Under the pieces are notes generated by a model that was not told the DNA's origin, ran no database searches, and worked only from the letters and a program-made list of their open reading frames with translations. The position numbers were made by a program, and so were the translations under genes. Of a stretch of 64,000 nt of DNA, positions 16,271 through 61,407 are shown piece after piece. This stretch comes from Gekko japonicus (lineage: Eukaryota), in NCBI RefSeq assembly GCF_001447785.1, contig NW_015164189.1, positions 1,022,332 through 1,086,331 on the forward strand, given 5' to 3'. Position 1 is the stretch's first letter, and each line of letters opens with the position of its first letter.

Positions 16271-18663
16271 CCGAAATAAGAGTTTGGGGCAATCCTCTGT
16301 GTGTTTACTCAAATGTACATCCTTCCGTGGTCCATAGGACCAGGTGAACATGCATCTTTGTGTGTTATACAGACAGCATGACTGTTGCCGCAAAACGAGT
16401 ATTGCTTATACATAAGGTTGCTGTAATGTTTGAGAGGCTCACGGTGTGGGTTTGCCATATCATATGAAATATATGAAGTGAGTCGAATGTAATCTTATTG
16501 GCCATATCAAAATCTACTCAAATAAAGACAATATAATATGATACATCTTTGATATGTGATATGTCTACAATAATGTTCTTATTCCATTTATAATACAAGC
16601 TAATGTATTAATGATAATAAGATAGATTTTGAAATGTTAATATATTAATGAAATATTAAATTCATTCACTTTATTAATTTCTGTCTATTCATAAATACTT
16701 TTATATTCTCTCCCTCACATATTATGCTTGCTCTGTATGTTGGTCTTAAGACCATAATGATAAAATTAAACTAAACTTTTATATCAGTGAAATGAACACA
16801 AGTTCATATATAGTGCAAAAAAGCTCACAGTCGCACTGGGTCAACAAGAAGAAATCTATTTGATATGTGACTATTTTGTTCCTTTGTAGGGTCCAGCCTC
16901 AACTGTGTCACATAGAAACAGACTGAGGGGCATCTGGATATGTCCGCGTTCCTGAAAATTTCTTCTTGTTGACCCAGTAGGACTGTGAGCCTTTTTGCTC
17001 TAATGTCCCCCTGGCCACTGGGCATCCTTTAAGCCCTTTCCAGCTATTCTGGCAATACCAAAGATGCTGAGGAAACCAAGACAAGAAAAATCTTGATCTG
17101 CATAGCCTTCAATTGGCTGTTCAGACTCTGTTTTTCAGCATTAGTGGAGTTATCAATAGAAAATCCTTGGCAGATTCCAATAACAGCTTCCTTGAGCAAT
17201 CTAGCTTTATTCTCCTCCCTTGAGCTATTTATTTTCCTTCCTTGAGCTATCTAGCTTTATTTTCTTCCATATATAGTCCTGGATTTAATGAACTGGGTGG
17301 AATTCCATGCCTCTGTGTTTTTCTTCTCATTACAATCCTGTTAAATACATGCTGCTGAGTAAAGATATAAAGTTGAGGGGGGGGGAAATAATGGGAATGG
17401 TTTGTCCATGCCCCCCCAAAGCTTTTTCAATAGAAAATGGAAATTTTGAGGGGTACTGGAAAAAAAGTATTTGAAACAGTTTCTCTTTTCTGCCTTTCAT
17501 CTTCTTTCCTCTCTCTGCCTCCTTCTACCTACTATTCCACCATTTTGATCTATTTGTCTTTTGTACCTTGCTCCATTCTAGCTTTTCTTCCTGCCACTAT
17601 CTTTCTCCTTCCTTTTTCCTGACTGCCTCCCCTTGAGGTTCTAAATGAAACTATGGTAGCTATTTTGGATTACATTGGTGACCCCAGACTTGCCTCTGCT
17701 TACCTAGGCAATCCAAAATGGCTGCCACAGTCTGATAGGTAGTCCCCTGAGATGATCTTGTTTGTAAATATTGTTTTATATCTTCCTTTTTAATTTAAGA
17801 TTTTTTGGTAAACCAGAATTTCCCCCAGGTTTGTAGGGACACATCTGTATCTGTACTTTCTGTATCTGAGTCCACAGCTTTCTGTATCTGACTCCATTGT
17901 GCAGATGTTTTGATATGCACATTGGGGCCAGGTTCAGAATCACATCTCTAGAGAAGTTGGGGACCTGCAGGCTTTTTGGGGGGGCAATCCCATCTGACCC
18001 ACCTTTAGCTTGTTTCTTCTTTGCCCATGGTTGCTGACTTTCTCTCCACTCCCTGGTCACGGCATTCTCCCTTTTACCACACTCTCCCCTGTAGACCCCA
18101 GTTTTCTCCCTTGTCTTCTTCATTCTGCTGCCACTTTCTCTTTCCACAGCTCTCCTATAGGCCAGGCACCCAGTCAGCTGGTTGGCGGGAGGGCAGCTTT
18201 CTGCTCCCAGGCTGCTGTGTGCCAGCCTGCTGATGGGGGTGGTGGTGGTAGAGGGGAAAGCATAATGAGTGGTGGGTGGCTCCAAACAAGCATTGCTGCT
18301 GCCCCCTTCCCTTCCAGCCTTTTTCACCTCCTGGCTGTCATCGAACTACTTTCTCCTCCATGCTTTTGTTAATTGTCTGTTGTCATGCCGACCATGATCT
18401 TGCAGTTGCAGACCTTGCTTCTTTGGTCTTGGGGCTTCAAACTCCCAGCTTTTAAAAATGTAATTTTTGTGCAACTTTTAGCGTTCTTCTGGGATTGTCA
18501 AAAAATTATCTGTCTGAACACGGCCCCATTTTACAGATTTTTTTTTAAAAAAATTGCATTCTGGCCATTATAGGACATTCTTCTGAATACTGTAGACCTG
18601 TAGAATGTGTTTTCAAGGATATGATTTGTTGTATAACCAATATACTGTAATATGTTTATAATA

Positions 18664-27104: not shown

Positions 27105-27992
27105 TTATAGAATCATAGAATCACAGAGTTGGAAGGGGCCATACACGCCATCTAGTCGAACCCCCTGCTTAATGCAGAATCAGCCTAGAGCATCCCTGAC
27201 AAGTGTTTGTCCAGCTGCTGCTTATAGATTGCCAGTGCGGGGGAGCTCACCACCTCCCTACGCAGCAGATTCCACTGTTGAACAACTCTTACTGTCAAAA
27301 TGTTTTCCCTAATATTCAGCCGGTACCTCCTTGCCCTTAATTTAAACCCATTATTGTGAGTCCTACCCTCTGCTGCCATCAAGAACAGCTGCCTGCCCTC
27401 CGCTTAAGTGACAGCCCTTCAAATACTTAAAGAGAGCAATCATATTCCCCTTCAACCTCCTCTTCTCCATACTGAACCATTCCCAAGTCCCTCACTCTTT
27501 CTTCATAGGGCTTGGTCCCTAGGCCCCCGATCATCCTCATTGCTGTCCTCTGCACCCGCTCCATTCTGTCCACATCCTTTTTGAAGTGAGGCCTCCAGAA
27601 CTGCACAGAGTACTCCAGGTGTGGCCTGACCAATGCAGTGTACAGCGGGACTACGACATTTTTCGATTTGGATGTTATGCCTCTGTTGATACACCCCAAG
27701 ATTGCATTAGCCTTTTTTGTCGCTGCATCACACTGGCTGCTCATATTTAACTTACAGTCCACCCATACCCCAAGATCTTGTTCACACACACACTGCCACC
27801 AAAAAGTGTACTCCCCATCCGGTGTGTGTGTTCCTCATTTTTGTTACCCAGATGAAGAACTTGGCATTTATCCTTGTTAAATTGCATCTTGTTCATATCT
27901 GTCCATTTTTCCAGTGTGTTCAGATCTTGTTGAATTCTGTATCTTCTGGTGTGTTCACTGCTCCTCCAAATTGGGTGTCATCTGCAGATTTA
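27105..27992 (-). mobile_element. CR1 LINE 3' portion
   Basis: [30 protein letters not shown]...LVRPHLEYSVQFW motifs; (ATTCTATG)n-type 3' microsatellite at about 27105-27125. Confidence 0.92.
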
Positions 27993-28625
27993 AGACCAAC
28001 TAAGTTTCACATAACAAAGGGCAAAAACGTTTGAGTTCTCCACGATTCTCAAGGCAGACGTTACCCCACCTCCAAAATGGGGGGTGGGGGGAGAAAGATG
28101 CTGGCTGGGATGTGATGCAGAGCCCTGGTGTATGTGCCATGCTAGGTGTTAGAGATACATGCTGGGGTGTGTGCATTTTTTTCTTTTTTCTTTTTTAAAC
28201 AATTGCATTGGAGAATGCAGGTGTCAGGGCAAGGTAGTTTGCACTCCCCCAGGGGCATTGCCTCCTCTCCCCTGGGCAATGGGGCAGGCTCATCCAGACC
28301 AGGGCTGAAAGGGGGGGAGTTGAAGGGGGGAAGAGTGATGGGCCCCAGGAGAAATTGCAACAACAGTTGGCCAGTTAAGTCAGCCACCACCAAAGAGCAG
28401 CTTGGCTCTGGCCAACCAAGAGCTATGCCTGGAACTCATCTCCCCCACCGTAGAGGAAGAAAGTGAGAGGGAGAGAGGCACTCGCAAAGAGGTGCTTGTC
28501 GGCAGAGACCAGCGCAAGGCAGCTTCTGCCCAGCCAACTGAGGGCAGCGTCTGGCTCAGGCTTAGCAGAGGAAGAAAGATGGAGAGAGGCACCCACCAGT
28601 AAGGTGCATGTCGGCTGGGAGCATT

Positions 28626-28905: not shown

Positions 28906-30718
28906 TGGACCTGGCCTCCAGCCAGCTAAGAGCAGTGCCTGGCTCTCGCGGATCTTATGCAGTTTTGCTGGGCTTGTAAAGCAGAGATGTTCCGTCAGGC
29001 CTTTGGTTGAAGACAGCAAGGGGCACCATCCTGGCTGGCACTGCCTTCTCCCTTCTTTTTCCAACTATGCTCCCACCCACCTGTCAGTCAGGGCCACAGT
29101 CTCGAATTCAATGTATTAACGCTATCTGAATAATGCTATTTATGGATTGTTTTTAATTCGTTTATTTAAATTGTTGGACTTGTTTTAATATGATGTTGTA
29201 TCTTTGTTGTTCATTGCTCCATGCCCTGAGTACTCAGGGATTGAGCGATTTATAAATCTAACTTATAAATAAACAAACAAAATATAAGTTGTCTTTGCAG
29301 CAGCTCACACCACAGTGCAAGGATCTTTACTGCATTACCATGTTTATGCAAGAAAATATTTTTAAAAGGCATTTTGTTAAACATAGCTTTCACCTGAAGT
29401 GCTGAAGAACTATACTTAACCTCACTTGCTGACATTCTATAGTAGGCTCCGCCTACTGTGCCATGTGTTTTGTACCCACCACTCTGTGTCAGAATTCCAA
29501 AGGATGCCTGCAAACTTGAAAAGGCTGGGGATTCCTGTCCTAAAATGTCCCTGTCCTTCTTCAGATACATTGAAACACAAGTCACCAACCATTACATGTA
29601 GGTAGAGGATGAGGAGGCCATTGCCAGGAAGGTCCAATTAGAGTCAAGATGTATAAGTAACTGAGCAGTAAATAGAACTAAGACTGGATGAAGGTAAGAC
29701 CTGTGAGTAGCAGCAAATTAGCATACAGCATAATAAAGGAGTTTACAAACAGATGGGAGAACTGAATGACCTTAGCATGTGCAGTGAGATAAGTAACCAA
29801 TCTCTCTGTTAGCGGGGTGGGGGTGGGGGAGGGTGTTCCATTGTCCTGAGTGGTGTAATAACTTGTAACTCAGCAGTCTCCTGTTCTAGTCTGTTTCTGA
29901 AGTTTCTTTGCAATAAAACAGCTAGTTTGAGGTCCCCCATTGAATGTCCTGGAAGGTTGAAGTGTTCTCCTACATGTTTCTCAGTTTTGTGACTCTTGAT
30001 GACAGATTTGTGCCTTTTATTCTTTGGCATAGGGTTTGACCTGTTTGCCCTATGTAGAGAACTGAAGGGCATTGTTGACATTTAATGGCATATACAGTGT
30101 TAGAAGATGAGCAAGTGAATGTGCCTGAGATAGTGTAATTGATGTTGCTAGTTCCAGTTATTGTGTTGTCTGGGTGTACGTGGCAGCAAAGTTGGCATCT
30201 GGGTTATTGCAAGCTCTGGTACCAGTGTCCATGTTCAAATTAGATATTGTTTCATTTTGGGTGAGGAGCTGTTTAAGATTGGGGGGCCATCTGTGTGCAA
30301 GAAAAGGTTTGTCCCCCAGTACTTGTGAAAGAACTGTCATCCAGTAGAGGTTGTAAGTCACAGATGATGCGTTGAACTGTTTTGAGTTTGAGCGCTGTAT
30401 GTGACCACTAGTAGTGTTCTGTTATTGTCTCTTTTGGGCCTGTCTTGCAAACAGGTCTTCTCTGAGTACCATTCTAGCTTTGTTAATATGTTTCTTGACT
30501 TCACCAGGTGGATATTTTAGTTGTAAAAAGGATTTGTTGTAGATCCTTGTCTGCAGGATTGGAACAGATGCAGTTGTAGTGTAGAACCTGGCTGTATACA
30601 ATGGATTGCTTGGTATGTTTAGGAGGTAGCCAGAGCCATGTAGATATGTTTTTCAGTCAGTAGGTTTCCAGTATAAGGTGGTGTCTGTGCGTCCATCGTG
30701 TATTTGTACAGTAGTGTC

Positions 30719-31911
30719 TGTCCAGACCACCAGTCATTCGAATAAATCCACGTTTGGGTTAGCAAAGTAGCATTTATTGAAAAGCGTTGATGAATCAACC
30801 GATCTGAGCACCGTCTCCCTAATTTCTGGGTTCAGTCCAACTCAGTACATTTCGACAAGGACATGGTCTGACCAATTCGGCAACTTGGCTGCTTGGTTCT
30901 GGAACTCAGCTGAGTATTCTCTCACCGTCTGGCGTCCTTGTTTAAACGTGCGCAGGAAAGCCTTCGCTCGTTGGCCGGCATTCACATCTTCGAACCGCGT
31001 TCTTAGGGCCCACATGAATGCACGTAAATTCTGCAACTCCGGGCCTCGGCTGTTGTGCAGCACCACATACCAGGTTGCCGCCGCTCCTTTCAGCCGGGAA
31101 GCGATCACATCGATCTTGTTACTATCGGTCGGGAACAGATGCCCATGCTGTGTTACGAATTTCTGCACCCTTACGGTGAAAAACGCCAGCTCTTCCGGAT
31201 TCCCGTCAAATGTTGCTTGCAGAAGGTCTTTCGGCCGTGGTCTCCCTTGGACCGGTTGAAGTGGTGGCGGCACGCCGGGAGCCCCTGGTGCCGGCAATGC
31301 CGGGCCGGCAGGTGCTGCCGGTTGTGCCAGTTGTGCCGGGACGGGTGGCTGTTGCGCCGCTTGTCGGGCCATGACCGTTTTGACCAATCGTTCCATCATC
31401 TCTGGGAGAGCATCAAACACCTCTCTCACCATTTGCATTAGCTGCTGCAGTGTTTTGTCGATGTCGTCCACTCTATCTTCCAATCCTCCGCGGTCTTCTT
31501 CAAGACCAGGATGTCTCTGTTTCTCCTTGGGTCGATCCGACACCCAAGGATCATCTCCGACCGCATACTGGTCGCCCAGGAGACCCAAGCTTTTCCCCGG
31601 GTACATCCCCTGCTCAAACAGGCTATCCCGCAACCCGCTACCGCGGTGCGAAAAAGTCTCTCTGGTGCCTCGTTCATTGAACAGTAAGTTTCATTCTTAA
31701 CAAAATGTCCAGACCACCAGTCATTCGAATAAATCCACGTTTGGGTTAGCAAAGTAGCATTTATTGAAAAGCGTTGATGAATCAGGAACAACAGGATTGT
31801 TAAGAATGAAACTTACTACAAGGTTACAACATAATAAACACACTTAAAGATGCCCCTACCCAATGGGACCAATTCCCGTGTGCGGGAAATCTAGGTTCTT
31901 TGCCGCCTAAC
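30719..31911 (-). mobile_element. Ty3/Gypsy (Tf1/sushi-like) LTR retrotransposon, internally deleted: 5' LTR, PBS, gag, then 79 bp of the 3' LTR
   Basis: 30719-30797 is identical to 31706-31784. The LTR ends ...TCTGGACA on the minus strand, and a gag-like ORF lies between the LTRs. It interrupts the Penelope RT frame exactly. Confidence 0.9.
30798..31633 (-). pseudogene. Retrotransposon Gag (coiled coil, Pro/Ala linker, capsid domain; sushi/PEG10-like)
   Basis: TFDGNPEELAFF, SRLKGAAATW and the MHR-like FKQGRQTVREYSAEFQ. In-frame stop at 30842-30844, after which it reads VGLNPEIRETVL up to the deletion point. Confidence 0.85.
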
Positions 31912-34084
31912 CAGAAACTGTATTTCTCGCATAGGTTGGTTCATTGTCAGATTGAAGGTCGGATGAAAGTCATTGAATGCCTGGTGGGATTTGTCCAGGG
32001 CTTCTTTACCATGTGTCCAGACAATAAAGATGTCATCAGTGTATCACAGGTATAAAAGAGGTGTGAGTGGGTGGGAGTTTAGGCAGAGTTGCTCCAAGTT
32101 GGCCATGAAGATGTTAGCATACTGAGGTGCCATGCAGGTGCCCATGGCTGTACCATTGATCTGAAGGAATGAGTTGTCACCAAATTTGAATTGGTTATGG
32201 GCAAGAACAAATCGGCAAAGTTTGGTGGCAAAGTCAGCCGTGATATCAGAAATCATGTTCCTTTTATGGCTTGTAATCCATCTTTGTATGGGATGTTGGT
32301 ATACAGAGATTCCACCTCCATGGTGGCTAAAATAGTATTCTCTGGAAGGCTGTTCAAAGATTGTATTTTCCTCAGACAATCTGTGGTGTCGTATACATAA
32401 CTAAGACTGTGGATGACAGGTCTTAAAACAGAGTCCATGTATCCTGATATTGCCATGGTGATAGTGCCTATGCCTGAGACAGTGGGGGCATCCTGGGTTT
32501 CTAGGTTTGTGTATTTCAGGTAGAAGATAAAAGGTACCTGGTCAAGGTTCCTGTGGTGTGTTTGAGATGATCTGTTCCTGGATGGGTAGGGGTAATTCCT
32601 TTATACTCTTGCTTAGTTCCTTTTTTGTATTTCTGTGTGACATCTGAGGACAGTTGTTTGTAAAAATGAAAAAAAAAAAAGGTTAAGGCTTGAATTGTTA
32701 AGCATATAGAAAAACAAGTATTCTGACTACGGCTTCTCCAGAAAGGAAGTATTGTACCTCCAACTTATTAGGGATTCTTTGAGAGTGTTAGTAACTAAGT
32801 GCAGTCTAGTCGTAGCTCTTCAGTATTTTAATCTAAAAAGGTGCCACCCATAGGACAGCAGGTATATTTGGTAGCAAGATAAACTTTATAACATTGAAAA
32901 CTACAAATTTATCAAATACATTATAGCATATTAATTATTGCCAAAATTATTCTGCTGGTCGTTGACCGTAATAATCAATATTCATGTTTTTAAAACGTAT
33001 CCTATATGTCTGTAGTATACATAGGAATCATCATTGTCTGACGCTGTGCATTTTGACTGAATAAAACCTTGTCTTTAAAATATTTCATGGATTCCAAAAG
33101 TGCTGCTCCAGATTTCCCTGTGTTTCTAATGGAAGAATTGAAAAAGGGTCCTCAAGGGAAGAAGGCTTCCTCCTATTTTTTTCTTCCAGGGTTCACACGT
33201 CTACATGGGACTGCCCATGAAGATTATTCAGAAATTTAAATGAGCACAAAATGTCATGGCCAGTGTCTTTACAGTGGCACATTAGGGAAATCTGTTTCTG
33301 GGCTTTATGGTGTTGTTTTTGATCGTTACAGCCCGAAACATTTCAGACTCGGAAGTATCTGATGGGCTGCTCCTCCTGTATCATCTTAAGATCTGAAAGC
33401 AGAAGTAGTGGGACCTGAGATCCATGCATGTTGTTTTCCTCTATGAAACCAGCCTTATCCGAGGTTAGGTTGCCCAGGACCCAGAGGAAAGGACTTTTCA
33501 AGCCTCCTTCCTCACATGATGTTATGGTAGCATCTCTGGAGGCCACCCAGATTAAGTTGAAGACTTTTCTTTTCTGGAAGGCGTTTGAATGACATTGATA
33601 TGTGTGGTGTCTGCCATTGAAGCTGATGTTGCTAGTATTGTATGCTTTAAACAGTGTTTTATAGTATTTTATGTGGTTTTATTATTTGCATCTTATGTTC
33701 TAATTTGTGTTGATCAAAAGATATTCTAAAAGTATGCTAAATACTTAAAAATAAACTAAATTTGAATTTAACCTTGCTGGACAGTTGGATGAACAAGAAC
33801 GTTTTAGAGCTATGTGCTATTTGGCTTCTGCATGGTTTAGATTAGATACCTATTTACTTTTGGATGTAGAAATGAGGAAATGCGAACTCATGTGATTCTT
33901 TATTTGTAGAACTGGGTGTATAGCTGCAGTTTAGAGAGCTGTGCAATGGGAGCTCTTTTCTCTTTCTGTTAGCCCCACATGACAAAATGCCCCTAAAGCG
34001 TAAGGGAACTTTAAAAAAAACAACAACTGCATGTACTTCAAGTAGTCGCTATTAGGAGAGTAATAAGATGCAGTAAGTACATAC

Positions 34085-37814: not shown

Positions 37815-39180
37815 CAGTGGGACTAGGACATCTTGCGATGTGGATGTTATGCCTCTGTTGATACACCCCAAGATTGCATTAGCCTTTTTTGTTGCCGCAT
37901 CACACTGGCTGCACATATTTAACTTTTGGTCAACCTGTACCCCAAGATCTTGTTCACATACATACTGCTACTCAGAAGTGTATTCCCCATCCAGTATGCG
38001 TGTTTCTCATTTTTGTTACCCAGATGTAGAGTTCTATCTGCTGTTGGGCGGCCAGTCTGACTCTAGTCTGGAAGATCTGGGTTTGGCGTTGTGGGCCGTG
38101 GCTGGTTGGCTTAGACTGAGCCGACTGAAATTGAATCCAAAGTCGGGGTGGCCCAGGGTTAGGGATCCCACTCCCATCCTTCGATGGGGCACCATTGGTG
38201 CCAGTGTCAGAGGTTAGGAGTTTGGGAGTACTCCTGGACATCTCCCTAATGATGGAGGCCCAGGTAGCAGCCACTGCTGTCAGCCTTTTATCATTTTTGG
38301 CTGATTAGGCAGTTGGTTCCCTTCCTCGAAAGCAATGACTTGGCAACTGTGATCCATGCGATGGTCACATCAAGATTAGAGTACTATAATGCTCTCTACA
38401 TCGGGCTGCCCTTCACCCAAATCTAGAAGCTTCAGCTGGCACAGAACGTGGTGGCCAGGCTGTTCTTGGGTCTCCCCATGTGGGAGCACATCCACCCTGC
38501 GCTAAAACCACTGCACTGGCGAACCGAATTTGCTTCAAGGTGCCCTTTATGGTCAGGGACCTACTTACCTGAGGGACCGCCTTTCTTCACACGTTACCCA
38601 GAGAGCACTACGGTCAGGGTCTCAAAAGGATGCCAGGCTGGCATTGACCAGGGCCTTTTCAGTGGCGGCTCCTACCTGGTGGAGGGAGCTCCCAGAAGAG
38701 ATCAGGGCCCTGCGGGACCTTTTACAATTCCACAGGGCCTGTAAAACGGAGCTCTTCCACCAGGCCTTCAGGTAAGGAGCTGCATGGCCCGCACTTAACA
38801 ACTGAAGACCCTGTGCCCAACACCACCATCCAGCCTGCGCTTGCTGATAAAAAAATCATCTGCTGATGTTAAATTATTATGTTTACTGCTACTATTGCAC
38901 TGCCACCGCCATACAAATTGCTTTTGGTAATTATGTTTTATGTTGATATTTACAGGGCGGGGCACAAATCAAATCAATCAATAAATTGCGTCTTGGTCAT
39001 ATCCGCCCACTTTCCCAGTGTGTTCAGGTCTCGTTGAATTCTCTATCTTCTGGTGTGCTTGCTGCTCCTCCCAATTTGGTGTCATCTACAAATTTAATGA
39101 GTAGCCCCTGCACACCCTCATCCAGATCATTTATAAAACTATTGAAAAGTACTGGGCCCAGAACCAAGCCCTGTGGCAGA
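37815..39180 (-). mobile_element. CR1 fragment interrupted by an L2 (+) at about 38030-38985
   Basis: 37815-38030 and 38985-39180 are collinear with the CR1 at 27645-27990. The insert has L2 motifs (MEAQVAAT, RDLLQFHRACKTELF) and a 3' CAAAT/CAAT tail. Confidence 0.85.
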
Positions 39181-45513: not shown

Positions 45514-47589
45514 CATTGCCTTTCAAGTACAATTGGCATCATGCACAAACCTGTTTCTTCTTGCTGCCATTTCCGATGGAAGCTTAAATAAAATTCAGCA
45601 AGTCTACCAGGTAATGTTATAATATATTCTGGATGACTTTTGCCAATGATTAAACTAGCAGCCTTTATTACTGCTTTAGCTATGCTTACACACTAAATTG
45701 AAATTTTGAAAGGCTTGCTATTAGAAATGCCTCCTTGCTTGCTGGAATGAATAATATATTCTTCATGAGCATCCCACTGACTGTAACCATCATGTCAGGT
45801 AGGAGAACCTGCCACACTTTGGTGTGCTTGCCCTGATGTTCACGATAACGGGCACCAGATGCAAAAGACCTGACATGGCACCTTTCCACAGTGCAGATTG
45901 TTCTGTGCTACCGCTGACAGTCTTTGAACTTTTCAGTTATTATATAAGGATGATATACTTTGCTACCATTGTTCAGTTTGACAGAAAACAATTTATTGCA
46001 TCAGGTAAATGTTGCAAAATGGAGCAATAGGCTTTATATAAAAGAAAATGGGGTATGTCTTTTCTACTATGGAAGTAGATTTCAGTTAACACCACTCAGT
46101 TAAATATTCACATAGCATTAAAAGAAATTTTTGACTTGTGTAATTTCTATAGCAGGGCACAACCTCAGTAGAAACTTAGTTTAATCTTAGCTTAGTTGAC
46201 AGACTGGTAAGCAATGTGGGATGCTGGTTTTTGTGCCAATCACTTCAGTTCTGCTTTCTTTCCAGATATTTGGTAGTGCCTTGCTTAGATTGTGAAACTT
46301 CCTTTTTTCCATTTCACATTGTTGAATATATTTGCCTAATGGGTTGTTATATTGTGTGGGCATGCAGTTGCTTTTACAAAAGGAAAGCAAGCAATTCAGA
46401 GCTAGACTTTCTTGCTTGAGAATACATTTCTGTATGCGTTTATTGTAATTGCTATCTCTTCCTGTTTCAAAATGGTGCTGTCCAGATAATTACTGAAGTT
46501 TCTTAAGCTGGTGCAATATAAAGTACTAGCTTTCTTCTGACCTATAGTAGTCATCTAAAATCTGTTATCACAATTTGGCAACTTCTTCTCTTATAGTTTC
46601 AGAGTTTCAGCAGAGGTCAGATTACATCTGCTCAATAGAACAAATACTTGCTACAGCTTTAGTAGTACAAGACAATGCCACATTTGCTCATACTTTATTT
46701 CTCCTGGCCTAGTTTTGCTACCCCAACCAGTGTTCAGGCTTCTTGATAAAAAAAAAATCCTGATTCCTGACTTTGTACAGTGAATTCTTTTGTTTTTCAT
46801 CCTGGTGACAATTCCAACTTCCTTATAGTTCTTGATCTTGTGCATGGAAGCAACAGAACTACTGGAGCTGATATTTCTCACTTAACTGCAGAGAGACTGT
46901 TTTATTTAAGAAATTTTCATACTGCTTTCCTAGAACTGCTTGAGGCAGCTCACAAGTGTATAACAGAACTAATCTGTTTTATTGTCTGTTTGGGTAGGTG
47001 GATGAAGGAGAGTGGTAGACATCAACACTATGTACCTTTAAAAATGAAACTAATTTAAGATAGTTTGTGATGTTTTATGGCACTGCAGTGGGTTGAGTCC
47101 CTAGAGCATTTCTGTGTTGGCAAAGTGAAGAGAGACCGACCATTGGACACTTACCGTGAAGGGTCCTTCTCCTCTGAGGACAGGAGGACATCTCCATGGG
47201 TTATTCCCACCGTGCCTTTAGGGAGGCAGGAAATAGTTTTTTCCCCTTCCTGTTGGCGCCTCCAGAATAGCCCATCTCCAGTTCTGGGACTCCGAAAGCA
47301 GTGCCTGTAGCCTGAAATAACTGGCCTTGCTCTATAAAATATAACTTTGAACATTAACCTCAACATGTAACAACCCAACTCTGCAGGATAGAGAAACCCC
47401 AGAGTAAGAGTAATAACGTGAGAGAGAAGAAATCAGCACAGAGAAATAAAAGCAGAGAAAGATGACAGTGGGATGGCCGAGATGTCCTCCTGTCCTCAGA
47501 GGAGAAGGACCCTTCACGGTAAGTGTCCAATGGTCGTTCTCCCTCTGAGGTGGAGGACATCTCCATGGGACCTCCCCGAGCAGTGTCCC

Positions 47590-55256: not shown

Positions 55257-55496
55257 AGGAAAAGAGGAAGGAGAGAAGTAGAGGAAGAAAATGCAAAGGC
55301 TTTGAAAAAAGAGGAAAATTAAGATAGGTTCTTTAAGGTACAGCTAGGACTAGCTAGACTGTGCTGCTTCTCCCTAGTGAAGCAGGAACAGAACTGGATA
55401 TGGGCTATTCCAGAGGCGCCAACAGGAAGGGGAAAAAACTATTTCCTGCTTCCCTAAAGGCACGGTGGGAATAATCCTTTAAGATGTCCTCCACCT

Positions 55497-58546: not shown

Positions 58547-61407
58547 TTCTCCCTTTGAGGCGGAGGACATCTTATTTGCTTTGGTGTTTTCCACCATCCA
58601 TTCAGGGGGGGACATCTTATTTGCTTTGGTGTTTTCCATTCAGGGAGCCAGGACTGATCTTCTCACTTCCTGTCTCCTGAGATCCACCCTTTTCCTCCAG
58701 TTCTTTTCCTCCCTTACAGGGAGAGCAACTTAAAATAGGCTCTGACTGTATCTATTCCTCTATTTCTGTTTTCTATTTCCCTGTTTAGCTGAACCTCTAC
58801 TTCCTAACCCTCCTTACACCTCTTATTATGTTGTCTTTAATCCTGTCTTCCTCCTCTTCTTTATTCCAACTAGAAGCTCAGTTTGAGGCTAGCTGTTACC
58901 TCAACGGCAAGTACTTCAGCCCCAGTGGGGGAAGACCCCTAGCACAGACAAATGATGGCCAACAACTCAGGTGGTTTTCTTTTGGAGGAGGAGCCCTCTG
59001 CCCTCCAGAATATTGTAGCCATCTCAGATCTGTGGAGCTGACATGACCCTTGAAGGGCTTGATCTGGCGGCCGCTAGCAGCTCCCTCCAGTGTGTCTACA
59101 AAAAGCACCAAAATGGAGAGTGGCCAACACTCTTGAGTCAACAGCCAAGGCACAGCAGCAGAAGGCGGGCTCAGCTGAAGATTGACCTTTGTGCAACCTG
59201 TGGGCAAACTGCTTAACGCTAAGAGCCACACCACCATGGGGAAATCCAATCCCTCTGCAGTTCAGGCTCACCCAGAGCAGGTCAGAGCTAACTTTTTTAC
59301 TGTTCCTTCGGCTGTCGTCATGTCATAAAGATATGGTTAGAAAAGTGATACACTATCTCAGCAGATGGAGGAAATAGTCATTCTAGCTCCAGACTCACGT
59401 GAAGAGGTTCTTCACCAACTACTTCCACCCACGAGCTGAGAACACCAATGCTCTGATGTCCCCTTGGCCGCAGGGTGTGATGTGCGCCTTCCCGCCTTTT
59501 CTAGTGATTCTGAAACTGTTGAGAAGAATCAGAATCTTCCAGACAGACGTCATCCTAGTGGTGCCGCATTAACTGAGTCACCCCTGGTTTTCTGACCTAC
59601 AGGACATGTCCATTGTCCTTCCTTTAGCTCTTCCTCCTTTGCCAGACATGCTTCACCAAGGTCCGATCTGGCACCCACAGCCAGAACCTCTCCACATGAC
59701 CGTGTGGAGATTGAGAAGGGCAAATTCGTAAAGCAAGGTTATTCCTCAGATGTCACCAACACATTACTGGCATTGTGGAGGAGTTCCACGGTCATAATTT
59801 TTAATATCACATGGAAGGACTTCGTCCACTGGTGCAGGAGGAAATGCATCAACCACCTCAAGCTCTTTCTCACCGCCATTCTGGACTTCTTCCAGAATGG
59901 GTCTTTGAGCACCCTGGAGGCTCCCACTCTTTGCCATCAGGCGGCAGCATCAACTGTCCCCCCTAAGTTCCAAGGTGGGACTCTTGCCCAACACCCACAC
60001 GTCAAGTTGTTTCTCAAGGACACCTCTACCAGAGACCCTCCTGCCATGTACAGGTTCCCTACCTGGAAGTTTAATATGATCTTATCTGTGCTCCCCAGGC
60101 CTCCATTCGAGCTGATCAAATACATCCTAAGGGGCTGTGAATGAAAGCATTGTTTCTTACAGCTGTTACCTTGGCCAGAAGGGTTTCCGAGTTGGGAACA
60201 GTCTTAAGGACTGATTGGACCTTTAGACCGAAGGTTTCATCTACTTTCCACAGATCTCAAGAGTTGAACGTACCTTCCTTTTGCCCCAATCAAACTCATT
60301 CACAAGAAAAGGTTTGGCACACCTTAGACGTCTGTTCAAGTGTGACTGGCTATTTGTTAACACACACCCCACACACACTCAGGCAAAGAGAAGTCGAGGT
60401 GTTCTATAAGTAGGACCATATGATCCTGAATTGAAGAGGCATACAGATCCACCAGCTTGCCCATCCCTCCCGAAATTATGGCTCGCTCACTCAGAAGCGC
60501 CTTTAGTAATGTGGCTTTCACCAGAAATGCCTCAGTAGGGGAGATAAATAGAGTCACTACATGGTCATTGGTTTCTACACCCATTAGGCACTTTAGCTTT
60601 GCTGAAGCATCCTTTGGACAGAGGGTACTTCAACACATCCTGGATGATGATGACTCCCTGTCGAAGTCATAGAGACACTGCTTTCGGAGGTCCCAAGCAA
60701 GATGTCCGCTGCTTCAGAGGGTGAATGGCCACTGGCCATTTACCATGAAGGGCCCTTCTCCTCTGAGGACAGGAGGACATCTTGGCCCTCCCTGAGCCAT
60801 CATCCCATCTTTGAGGTTAGGTTCTTTATCCGTTCTACTGTTACTTGTGCTACTTCCTGTTGTTTTCCTGTTATTTACCAAGTCAGTGATATCTAGCATA
60901 GTTATGGAGAAATTACTGCAGTTTGAGTATTGGAACTTGAGGAAAGGGGTGGATCCCACTCAGGAGACAGAGAGTGAGAAGATTTGCCCTGCCTCCCTAA
61001 ATGGATGGTAGGAAGCAAGTAAGATTTATTTATTTATAGTCAAATTTATACCTTGCCCTCCTTGCAAAGCAGGCCCAGGGCGGCTTCCAACAACAATACA
61101 ACAATACAGAATAAAAACATAAATAATACCGAATTAAAACACAGCATTTAAATAGTACATTACAAAATATCAGAGTACTGGTGGCAGTTAAAATCAAATG
61201 AATAAAGTGCTTTCAAACAGAGTGCTTCGATGTTATTCCACATAAAGTGTTTAGATGTTATTCTGCTCGTTCTTGAGGCAGCTGCTCGATGTTAACATTA
61301 CGGGCCATGCACTAGGGCGGAGGTGGCGGCAGCCCCTAATTGTATGCCTGGTGGTCCCGCAGGGCCCTGAAAAGGGCCCTTCATGTTAAGTGGCAAATGA
61401 TCGTTCT
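58547..61407 (+). mobile_element. Third DIRS element, older and heavily deleted, with an L2 3' fragment (about 61023-61370, -) in its right ITR
   Basis: Starts TTCTCCCTTTGAGGCGGAGGACATCT like the outer DIRS. MT remnant CAFPPF; YR remnants LARRVSELG and ARSLRSA; ICR at about 60700-60783 is complementary to 58547-58575 and 61371-61400; GTTCT at both ends. Confidence 0.85.

What the first reader, a model, noticed from the sequence alone, without database searches (positions are those of the whole stretch)
31683..31850. Self-priming LTR retrotransposon: the PBS is a perfect 21-nt complement of its own LTR
Seen in sequence: on the element (minus) strand, 2 nt after the 5' LTR end (31706), the PBS slot reads TTGTTAAGAATGAAACTTACT (31703-31683). 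It does not begin TGG, so it cannot pair with a tRNA CCA end. Its exact complement AGTAAGTTTCATTCTTAACAA lies inside the same LTR (31817-31797). A TATA-like TTTAAG sits about 26-31 nt upstream of 31817, and AATAAA (31765-31760) lies downstream. Established: S. pombe Tf1 primes reverse transcription with the first 11 nt of its own RNA after RNase H cleavage, and self-priming has been proposed for the vertebrate Tf1/sushi group. Inference: transcription starts near 31817 and the RNA 5' end folds back on the PBS. This would be a tRNA-independent priming system in a lizard, with a duplex about twice the length of Tf1's.
Basis: partly seen in the sequence, partly recalled or inferred. Interest (0 to 1): 0.8.

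Follow-up and report, generated by a model that had tools for sequence, protein, structure and literature searches.

The report
Self-priming signature in broken lizard retrotransposon
A 1.2-kb broken remnant of a sushi/PEG10-like LTR retrotransposon has, at the primer-binding position, a perfect 21-nt complement of its own LTR, which fits the tRNA-independent "self-priming" already proposed for this group in fungi and vertebrates, so it is real but ordinary.

Summary
On the minus strand, 31817-31797 and 31703-31683 are perfect 21-nt complements. The second arm starts exactly 2 nt (TT) after the LTR end ...GGACA (31706), which is the canonical primer-binding slot. It starts TTG, not TGG.

The element is a defective 1.19-kb remnant (31910-30719) inserted in a high-copy RT-bearing repeat. 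It has a non-canonical 5' end, at most 1 nt of target duplication, a gag ORF with one in-frame stop, no pol, and only the last 79 nt of the 3' LTR. Its gag is Ty3/gypsy-type. A profile of its relatives matches PEG10 capsid best, so it is sushi-like.

Self-priming is the best explanation (about 0.7). It has already been described for the Tf1/sushi group from fungi to vertebrates (PMC4600332, PMC6317226). The scan also holds 39 unchecked notes of the same signature elsewhere in this genome.

Two things stay untested. RNA reads gave no molecule starts, so the transcript start at 31817 is unknown; it is also not required. DNA reads from other copies listed nine variant sites nearby and none in either arm.

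Verdict: new member of a known kind, low interest.

The parts
31706..31910 (-). 5' LTR as preserved (205 nt). The 3' end ...GGACA is firm. The 5' end is non-canonical (no TG) and probably truncated.
   Evidence: Empty-site junction taken from loose ends of reads of intact copies of the host repeat.
31843..31848 (-). TATA-like TTTAAG, 26-31 nt upstream of the 5' arm. Its promoter role is inferred only.
   Evidence: no start-site data.
31797..31817 (-). Candidate self-primer arm AGTAAGTTTCATTCTTAACAA inside the LTR.
31760..31765 (-). AATAAA poly(A) signal. It lies between the arms, inside the predicted inner hairpin.
31704..31705 (-). TT dinucleotide between the LTR's CA and the PBS, the usual position of the 2 nt trimmed by integrase.
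   Evidence: Established retroviral end structure (own knowledge).
31683..31703 (-). Primer-binding site, a perfect complement of 31817-31797. It begins TTG, not TGG.
30842..31633 (-). gag ORF (263 codons by the mechanical ORF call), ending at an in-frame TGA (30844-30842). The gag frame runs on for 15 more codons to the deletion junction at 30798/30797.
   Evidence: Pfam Retrotrans_gag 2e-11, DUF4939 and Ty3_capsid. 890 relatives.
30719..30797 (-). Last 79 nt of the 3' LTR, 100% identical to 31784-31706. Everything between gag and this point (rest of gag, pol, PPT, 5' part of the LTR) is missing.
31911..32456 (-). Upstream half of the interrupted host repeat. It is decayed and RT-bearing, and Penelope-like by motif recall only.
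   Evidence: DNA depth about 100 against 1-3 inside the insert. RVT_1-type clusters in the ESM Atlas. No Pfam hit.
29809..30718 (-). Downstream half of the same interrupted host repeat.

Best explanation
This is the 5' end of a young, defective Ty3/gypsy LTR retrotransposon with a sushi/PEG10-like gag. Its minus-strand primer is most likely a piece of its own RNA, not a tRNA. The proposed steps are as follows. The transcript contains the LTR arm 31817-31797. It folds back over the 93-nt R/U5 loop onto the PBS 31703-31683, forming a 21-bp duplex. The element's RNase H cuts at the 3' end of the arm, after 31797. The freed 3'-OH is extended from 31704 through U5 and R, giving a strong-stop DNA of about 93 nt that transfers to the 3' R. 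The plus strand later copies the retained RNA primer to regenerate the PBS complement. The linear DNA end ...ACATT is trimmed by integrase to ...ACA. Shown here: the duplex, its exact position, the absence of a CCA-type PBS, the fold and the gag family. Inferred: the RNA start, the cleavage, the priming and every later step. This particular copy cannot move, because it has no pol or PPT and both LTRs are incomplete.
For: The 21/21 complement is unique in the window. The PBS arm starts exactly 2 nt after the LTR's terminal CA, and that end is fixed independently by the 3' LTR remnant and flank junction. The fold has z = -5.8 and the arms alone give -26.9 kcal/mol. There is no TGG in the first ~100 nt after the LTR, no tRNA gene in the window and no Rfam family on either arm. 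The gag matches Retrotrans_gag, DUF4939 and Ty3_capsid; its relatives are squamate gag and gag-pol proteins, and their profile hits PEG10 capsid 7lga best, at 5.9e-11. PEG10 is a sushi-ichi-related gene (PMC4340606 abstract). Self-priming is reported as shared by Tf1/sushi elements of yeast and vertebrates (PMC6317226; PMC4600332). DNA reads from a few other copies (LTR depth about 8-10, PBS region about 5, at roughly 1x sampling) list nine variant sites in 31683-31850, none inside either arm.
Against: Only one copy was read and it is defective. No other copy could be fetched, so there is no co-variation test. The read-based conservation is weak: 0 of 9 sites in 25% of the span gives p about 0.075, and 57 further differences were not shown. 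The transcript start is unknown, and RNA reads on the LTR were few and came from diverged copies. The 5' LTR boundary is non-canonical. The host's tRNAs and small RNAs were not available. No biochemical evidence exists for any vertebrate element in what I could read.
Confidence: 0.7

Rival explanations
1. The 21-bp stem is a real, conserved RNA structure of the leader but not the primer. It could serve packaging or dimerisation, or hide or regulate the 5' poly(A) signal, like retroviral U5-leader and poly(A) hairpins. Priming would then use something else.
For: AAUAAA lies inside the structure enclosed by the stem. Retroviruses have long-range U5-leader pairings flanking the PBS (own knowledge).
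Against: In those cases a tRNA-type PBS sits between or beside the stems. Here the 3' arm itself fills the PBS slot at CA+2, and no TGG-type site follows for about 100 nt.
Confidence: 0.15
2. The inverted repeat is a private rearrangement of this damaged copy, such as an inverted duplication or a repair or template-switch artefact made when the remnant was formed, and is not a family feature.
For: The copy is clearly rearranged: it has an internal deletion, at most 1 nt of target duplication and a non-canonical 5' end.
Against: DNA reads at 90% identity or more cover both arm regions at several times single-copy depth with no listed differences. The arm begins exactly at CA+2. First-reader notes report the same design in other elements of this genome (unchecked).
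Confidence: 0.08
3. The PBS binds a host RNA that does not end in CCA, such as an internal tRNA fragment as in copia-type half-tRNA priming, or another small RNA. The match to the LTR would then be secondary.
For: Half-tRNA priming exists in Ty1/copia lineages (PMC6317226). Host tRNAs could not be compared here.
Against: A perfect 21-nt partner lies 93 nt away in cis. The sequence is AT-rich and unlike cytoplasmic tRNA. Rfam gave nothing.
Confidence: 0.04

Closest known systems
Tf1 (and Tf2, Tj1) of fission yeasts: experimentally shown or active self-primed LTR retrotransposons
   Same: The PBS lies directly after the 5' LTR and is complementary to the element's own upstream RNA. There is no tRNA-type PBS. 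A structured U5 loop sits between the arms. Both are Ty3/gypsy superfamily.
   Different: The Tf1 duplex is 11 nt and lies at the mapped 5' end of the mRNA, with RNase H cleavage demonstrated. Here the duplex is 21 nt (23 with two G-U pairs), the RNA start is unknown and nothing has been tested biochemically. The host is a lizard. This copy has no pol, so RT/IN kinship with Tf1 is untested.
Vertebrate Tf1/sushi group (V-clade chromoviruses: sushi-ichi, Amn-ichi/ni/san)
   Same: Vertebrate host (the V-clade is recorded in sauropsids; PMC2774666). The gag is sushi/PEG10-like. Self-priming has been proposed for the group (Butler et al. 2001, as cited in PMC6317226 and PMC4600332).
   Different: Membership rests on gag alone. 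The chromodomain and the RT/IN phylogeny cannot be examined in this copy. I could not read Butler et al., so I do not know how a 21-nt duplex compares with published vertebrate examples.
tRNA-primed LTR elements and retroviruses (for example MLV: ...CA TT TGGGGG...)
   Same: The same layout at the U5 end: CA, then 2 nt, then the PBS. A primer-length duplex (18 nt there, 21 nt here).
   Different: The PBS does not start TGG, and its partner is in cis in the LTR rather than a tRNA 3' end.

Membership tests
Self-primed (Tf1-type) LTR retrotransposons | The sequence at the PBS position, next to the 5' LTR, is complementary to the element's own upstream LTR/R sequence. | tested here: met
   21/21 nt, arms 31817-31797 and 31703-31683, with the PBS at CA+2.
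Self-primed (Tf1-type) LTR retrotransposons | No PBS complementary to a tRNA 3' CCA end. | tested here: met
   The PBS begins TTG, and there is no TGG within about 100 nt after the LTR. Matches to tRNA fragments could not be tested because no host tRNA set was available.
Self-primed (Tf1-type) LTR retrotransposons | The primer arm lies at, or at least within, the 5' end of the transcript. | not testable with these tools
   RNA reads were few, came from diverged copies, and reported no places where molecules begin.
Self-primed (Tf1-type) LTR retrotransposons | RNase H cleavage of the duplex and extension of the self-primer. | not testable with these tools
   This needs biochemistry.
Self-primed (Tf1-type) LTR retrotransposons | The complementarity is kept, or co-varies, across family copies. 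| tested here: inconclusive
Reads listed no variants in the arms against nine nearby.
Tf1/sushi group (V-clade chromoviruses) of Ty3/gypsy | Ty3/gypsy-type gag of the sushi/PEG10 kind. | tested here: met
   Retrotrans_gag 2e-11, DUF4939 29.6 bits (cut-off 29), Ty3_capsid. The family profile matches PEG10 capsid 7lga at 5.9e-11.
Tf1/sushi group (V-clade chromoviruses) of Ty3/gypsy | RT/RNase H/IN phylogeny places the element within the group. | not testable with these tools
   This copy has no pol. Relatives with 39-44% gag identity carry PR-RT-RNaseH-IN and a Tf2-1-like SH3 domain, but no reference tree was built.
Tf1/sushi group (V-clade chromoviruses) of Ty3/gypsy | Chromodomain at the integrase C-terminus. 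| tested here: inconclusive
   It is absent from this copy because pol is deleted. Two Anolis relatives with IN showed no Chromo hit, but their gene models stop just after the SH3 domain.
Intact LTR retrotransposon insertion | TG...CA LTRs, two full LTRs and a 4-6 bp target-site duplication. | tested here: not met
   The CA end is present. There is no TG start, only 79 nt of the 3' LTR, and at most 1 nt duplicated at the empty site reconstructed from reads.

The most novel reading that the evidence does not exclude
Long perfect duplexes (21 nt here; 28 bp is reported in an unchecked note elsewhere in this genome) could mark a squamate variant of self-priming. In that variant the arm would be internal to the RNA rather than at its 5' end. 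The hairpin, of small-RNA length, would be cut out by a host or element nuclease, so the primer could act in trans or also feed small-RNA silencing of the family.
Probability: 0.05. Interest if true: 0.6.

Novelty: new member of a known kind. Interest (0 to 1): 0.25.

Why it matters
This adds a squamate example, with an unusually long and perfect duplex, to the set of LTR elements inferred to prime reverse transcription with their own RNA. If the many similar notes in this genome hold, lizards would be a good place to test by co-variation whether vertebrate sushi-like elements really self-prime, which has never been shown biochemically outside fission yeast. This single broken copy changes nothing by itself.

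Tried and rejected
- The word-based homologue search with gag found nothing at E <= 1e-5. The exhaustive HMMER search then found 890 relatives.
- The search for related loci failed on metagenome contigs because no alignment block was conserved enough, failed the same way on viral contigs with the first alignment, and with the second alignment found no relative there.
- The exact 21-mer scan of metagenome contigs gave one hit, L001. It is an unrelated AT-rich contig with only one arm, so I rejected it as chance.
- The single-sequence PDB search gave nothing.
- Rfam gave only sub-threshold miRNA-hairpin noise.
- Pfam does not recognise the short pieces of the host repeat, so calling it Penelope-like rests on motif recall plus RVT_1-type Atlas clusters.
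- TGGTGGTCTGGACA at the LTR end as a tRNA-type PBS: rejected, because it is part of the 3' LTR copy that abuts the flank.
- A MITE-type hairpin origin for the arms: rejected, because the loop is true LTR sequence, duplicated at the 3' end.
- Levin 1995 and Lin & Levin 1997 are not held in the library, and Butler 2001 is not open access.

Full report
**Observation**

On the minus strand the sequence reads ...TCTGGACA (LTR end, 31706), then TT, then TTGTTAAGAATGAAACTTACT (31703-31683). Its exact reverse complement, AGTAAGTTTCATTCTTAACAA, lies at 31817-31797. A pattern search allowing up to 3 mismatches finds only these two sites in the 64 kb, against 0.01 expected.

A 79-nt segment at 31784-31706 recurs 100% identical at 30797-30719, and that copy ends on the same CA directly against the flanking repeat. 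TTTAAG (31848-31843) and AATAAA (31765-31760) are as stated.

As RNA, 31830-31670 folds into the 21-bp stem enclosing a structured R/U5 loop that contains AAUAAA. The energy is -48 kcal/mol and z = -5.8. The two arms alone give -26.9 kcal/mol.

As a control, I listed every perfect inverted repeat of 14 nt or more with a loop of 300 nt or less. There are four, and three have stems of 21 nt or more. The other two long ones are terminal-inverted-repeat-type hairpins at 16811-17002 and 47129-47544. A 21-nt hairpin alone is therefore not unique in this DNA. What is special is that one arm sits exactly at the primer-binding position.

**What the element is**

The insert runs from 31910/31911 to 30719 on the minus strand, about 1.19 kb. 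It interrupts a decayed, high-copy, RT-bearing repeat. DNA depth is about 100 on that repeat against 1-3 inside the insert, at roughly 1x sampling. Calling the host repeat Penelope-like rests on my recall of its motifs. Pfam did not recognise the short pieces, and the ESM Atlas placed one piece near RVT_1-type clusters.

Reads from uninterrupted copies of the host repeat give the empty site: base 30718 is followed directly by 31912 (loose ends). At most 1 nt is duplicated, and the left end of the insert does not begin TG. The right end is a clean CA. The 5' end is therefore non-canonical, most simply a truncated 5' LTR or a one-sided aberrant integration (inference).

Downstream of the PBS is a 263-codon gag ORF, 31633-30842, matching:
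- Retrotrans_gag at 2e-11
- DUF4939 at 29.6 bits (cut-off 29)
- Ty3_capsid

The ORF ends at an in-frame TGA. The frame continues for 15 codons to 30798, where it is joined directly to the last 79 nt of the LTR. The rest of gag, all of pol, the PPT and the 5' part of the 3' LTR are missing. The 79/79 identity of the LTR pieces suggests a young copy.

**Relatives**

The word search found nothing. The exhaustive HMMER search found 890 relatives at E <= 0.001. The best were Gekko kuhli (52% identity), a Sceloporus gag-PR-RT-RNaseH protein (44%), and Anolis proteins that NCBI names PEG10.

A profile of these gag sequences matches PEG10 capsid (7lga) best among solved structures, at 5.9e-11, ahead of Ty3. 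PEG10 belongs to the sushi-ichi-related genes (PMC4340606). By gag, then, the element is sushi-like.

Pol-based membership in the Tf1/sushi group, and the chromodomain, cannot be tested on this copy. Two Anolis relatives with integrase show a Tf2-1-like SH3 domain but no Chromo hit, and their gene models stop just after the SH3 domain.

**Mechanism**

The arrangement CA + 2 nt + PBS is the same as in tRNA-primed elements. The first base copied is the one just upstream of the PBS, and integrase trims the two extra bases (established knowledge, from memory).

Here the only plausible partner for the PBS is in cis. The PBS does not begin TGG, no TGG follows for about 100 nt, no tRNA gene is in the window, and Rfam finds nothing.

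The best reading is Tf1-type self-priming: fold-back, RNase H cut after 31797, extension through U5-R (about 93 nt), then transfer to the 3' R. Only the pairing, its position and the fold are shown. The rest is inference.

Any start at or upstream of 31817 leaves the arm in the RNA, and only a start downstream would refute the model.

RNA reads (3 runs) gave a handful of reads on the LTR, all from diverged copies, none on gag, and no start sites.

**Conservation**

I could not fetch other copies:
- Viral contigs held none.
- The metagenome scan returned one chance AT-rich hit.

The only indirect evidence comes from the DNA reads of a few other copies (LTR depth about 8-10, PBS about 5). They list nine variant positions between 31683 and 31850, and none falls in either arm. 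Similarity to other copies also falls off upstream of about 31825, near the arm's 5' edge. With 42 of 168 positions in the arms, zero of nine gives p of about 0.075, and 57 further differences were not displayed. This is suggestive only.

**Comparison with what is known**

Self-priming was demonstrated for Tf1 and is stated to be implicated in LTR retrotransposons from fungi to vertebrates (PMC4600332). It is described as likely common to Tf1/sushi elements (PMC6317226). V-clade chromoviruses are recorded in sauropsids (PMC2774666).

The scan's own index holds 39 unchecked first-reader notes of self-priming signatures elsewhere in this genome. They include 11-nt and 28-bp duplexes and a claimed compensatory change. 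I did not test these. They suggest the design is common here and that this scan has seen it before on other DNA.

**Verdict**

The copy is a dead remnant. The kind is already known, and the 21-nt length is a quantitative variant. I rate it a new member of a known kind, interest about 0.25.

Noticed in passing
window 16811-17002: A hairpin-type repeat with 45-nt arms (91% complementary, 21-nt perfect core) and a 102-nt loop, in AT-rich DNA with no ORF. It looks like a small MITE-like DNA-transposon remnant. It served as the background control for 21-nt inverted repeats.
   Followed up: partly
window 47129-47194 and 47479-47544 (also 60700-60801 and 55389-55492): Inverted repeat with a 58-nt perfect stem (66 nt at 97%) and a 284-nt loop. 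Related copies lie elsewhere in the window, so this is another repeat family with terminal inverted structure.
   Followed up: no
window 27643-27993 versus 37815-39097: Two direct-repeat blocks (216 nt at 88%, 116 nt at 86%) lie 10-11 kb apart and bracket the region that holds the finding. They could be LTRs of an older, larger element or two copies of an interspersed repeat.
   Followed up: no
window 31041-31093: A ~50-nt piece inside gag has DNA read depth of about 22, against 1-3 around it, with loose ends on both sides. This short stretch is shared with a more abundant repeat in the genome.
   Followed up: no
window 29809-30718 and 31911-32456: The interrupted host repeat (RT-bearing, Penelope-like by motifs) is high-copy (DNA depth about 100 at ~1x sampling). 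It is covered by RNA reads on both strands in two RNA runs (up to about 60 in X14).
   Followed up: partly
proteins P0152, P0047, P0011 (relatives found): Sushi-like gag/capsid domains occur fused to host-type domains in lizard gene models: RING + B-box (TRIM-like) in Anolis P0152, a tyrosine/serine-threonine kinase domain in P0047, and a 'formin-1-like' model in Eublepharis. These could be domestications or annotation chimeras.
   Followed up: no
L001 2918-2938: The 21-mer occurs once by chance in an unrelated AT-rich metagenome contig. This shows that exact 21-mers of this AT-rich composition can recur by chance in very large collections.
   Followed up: yes
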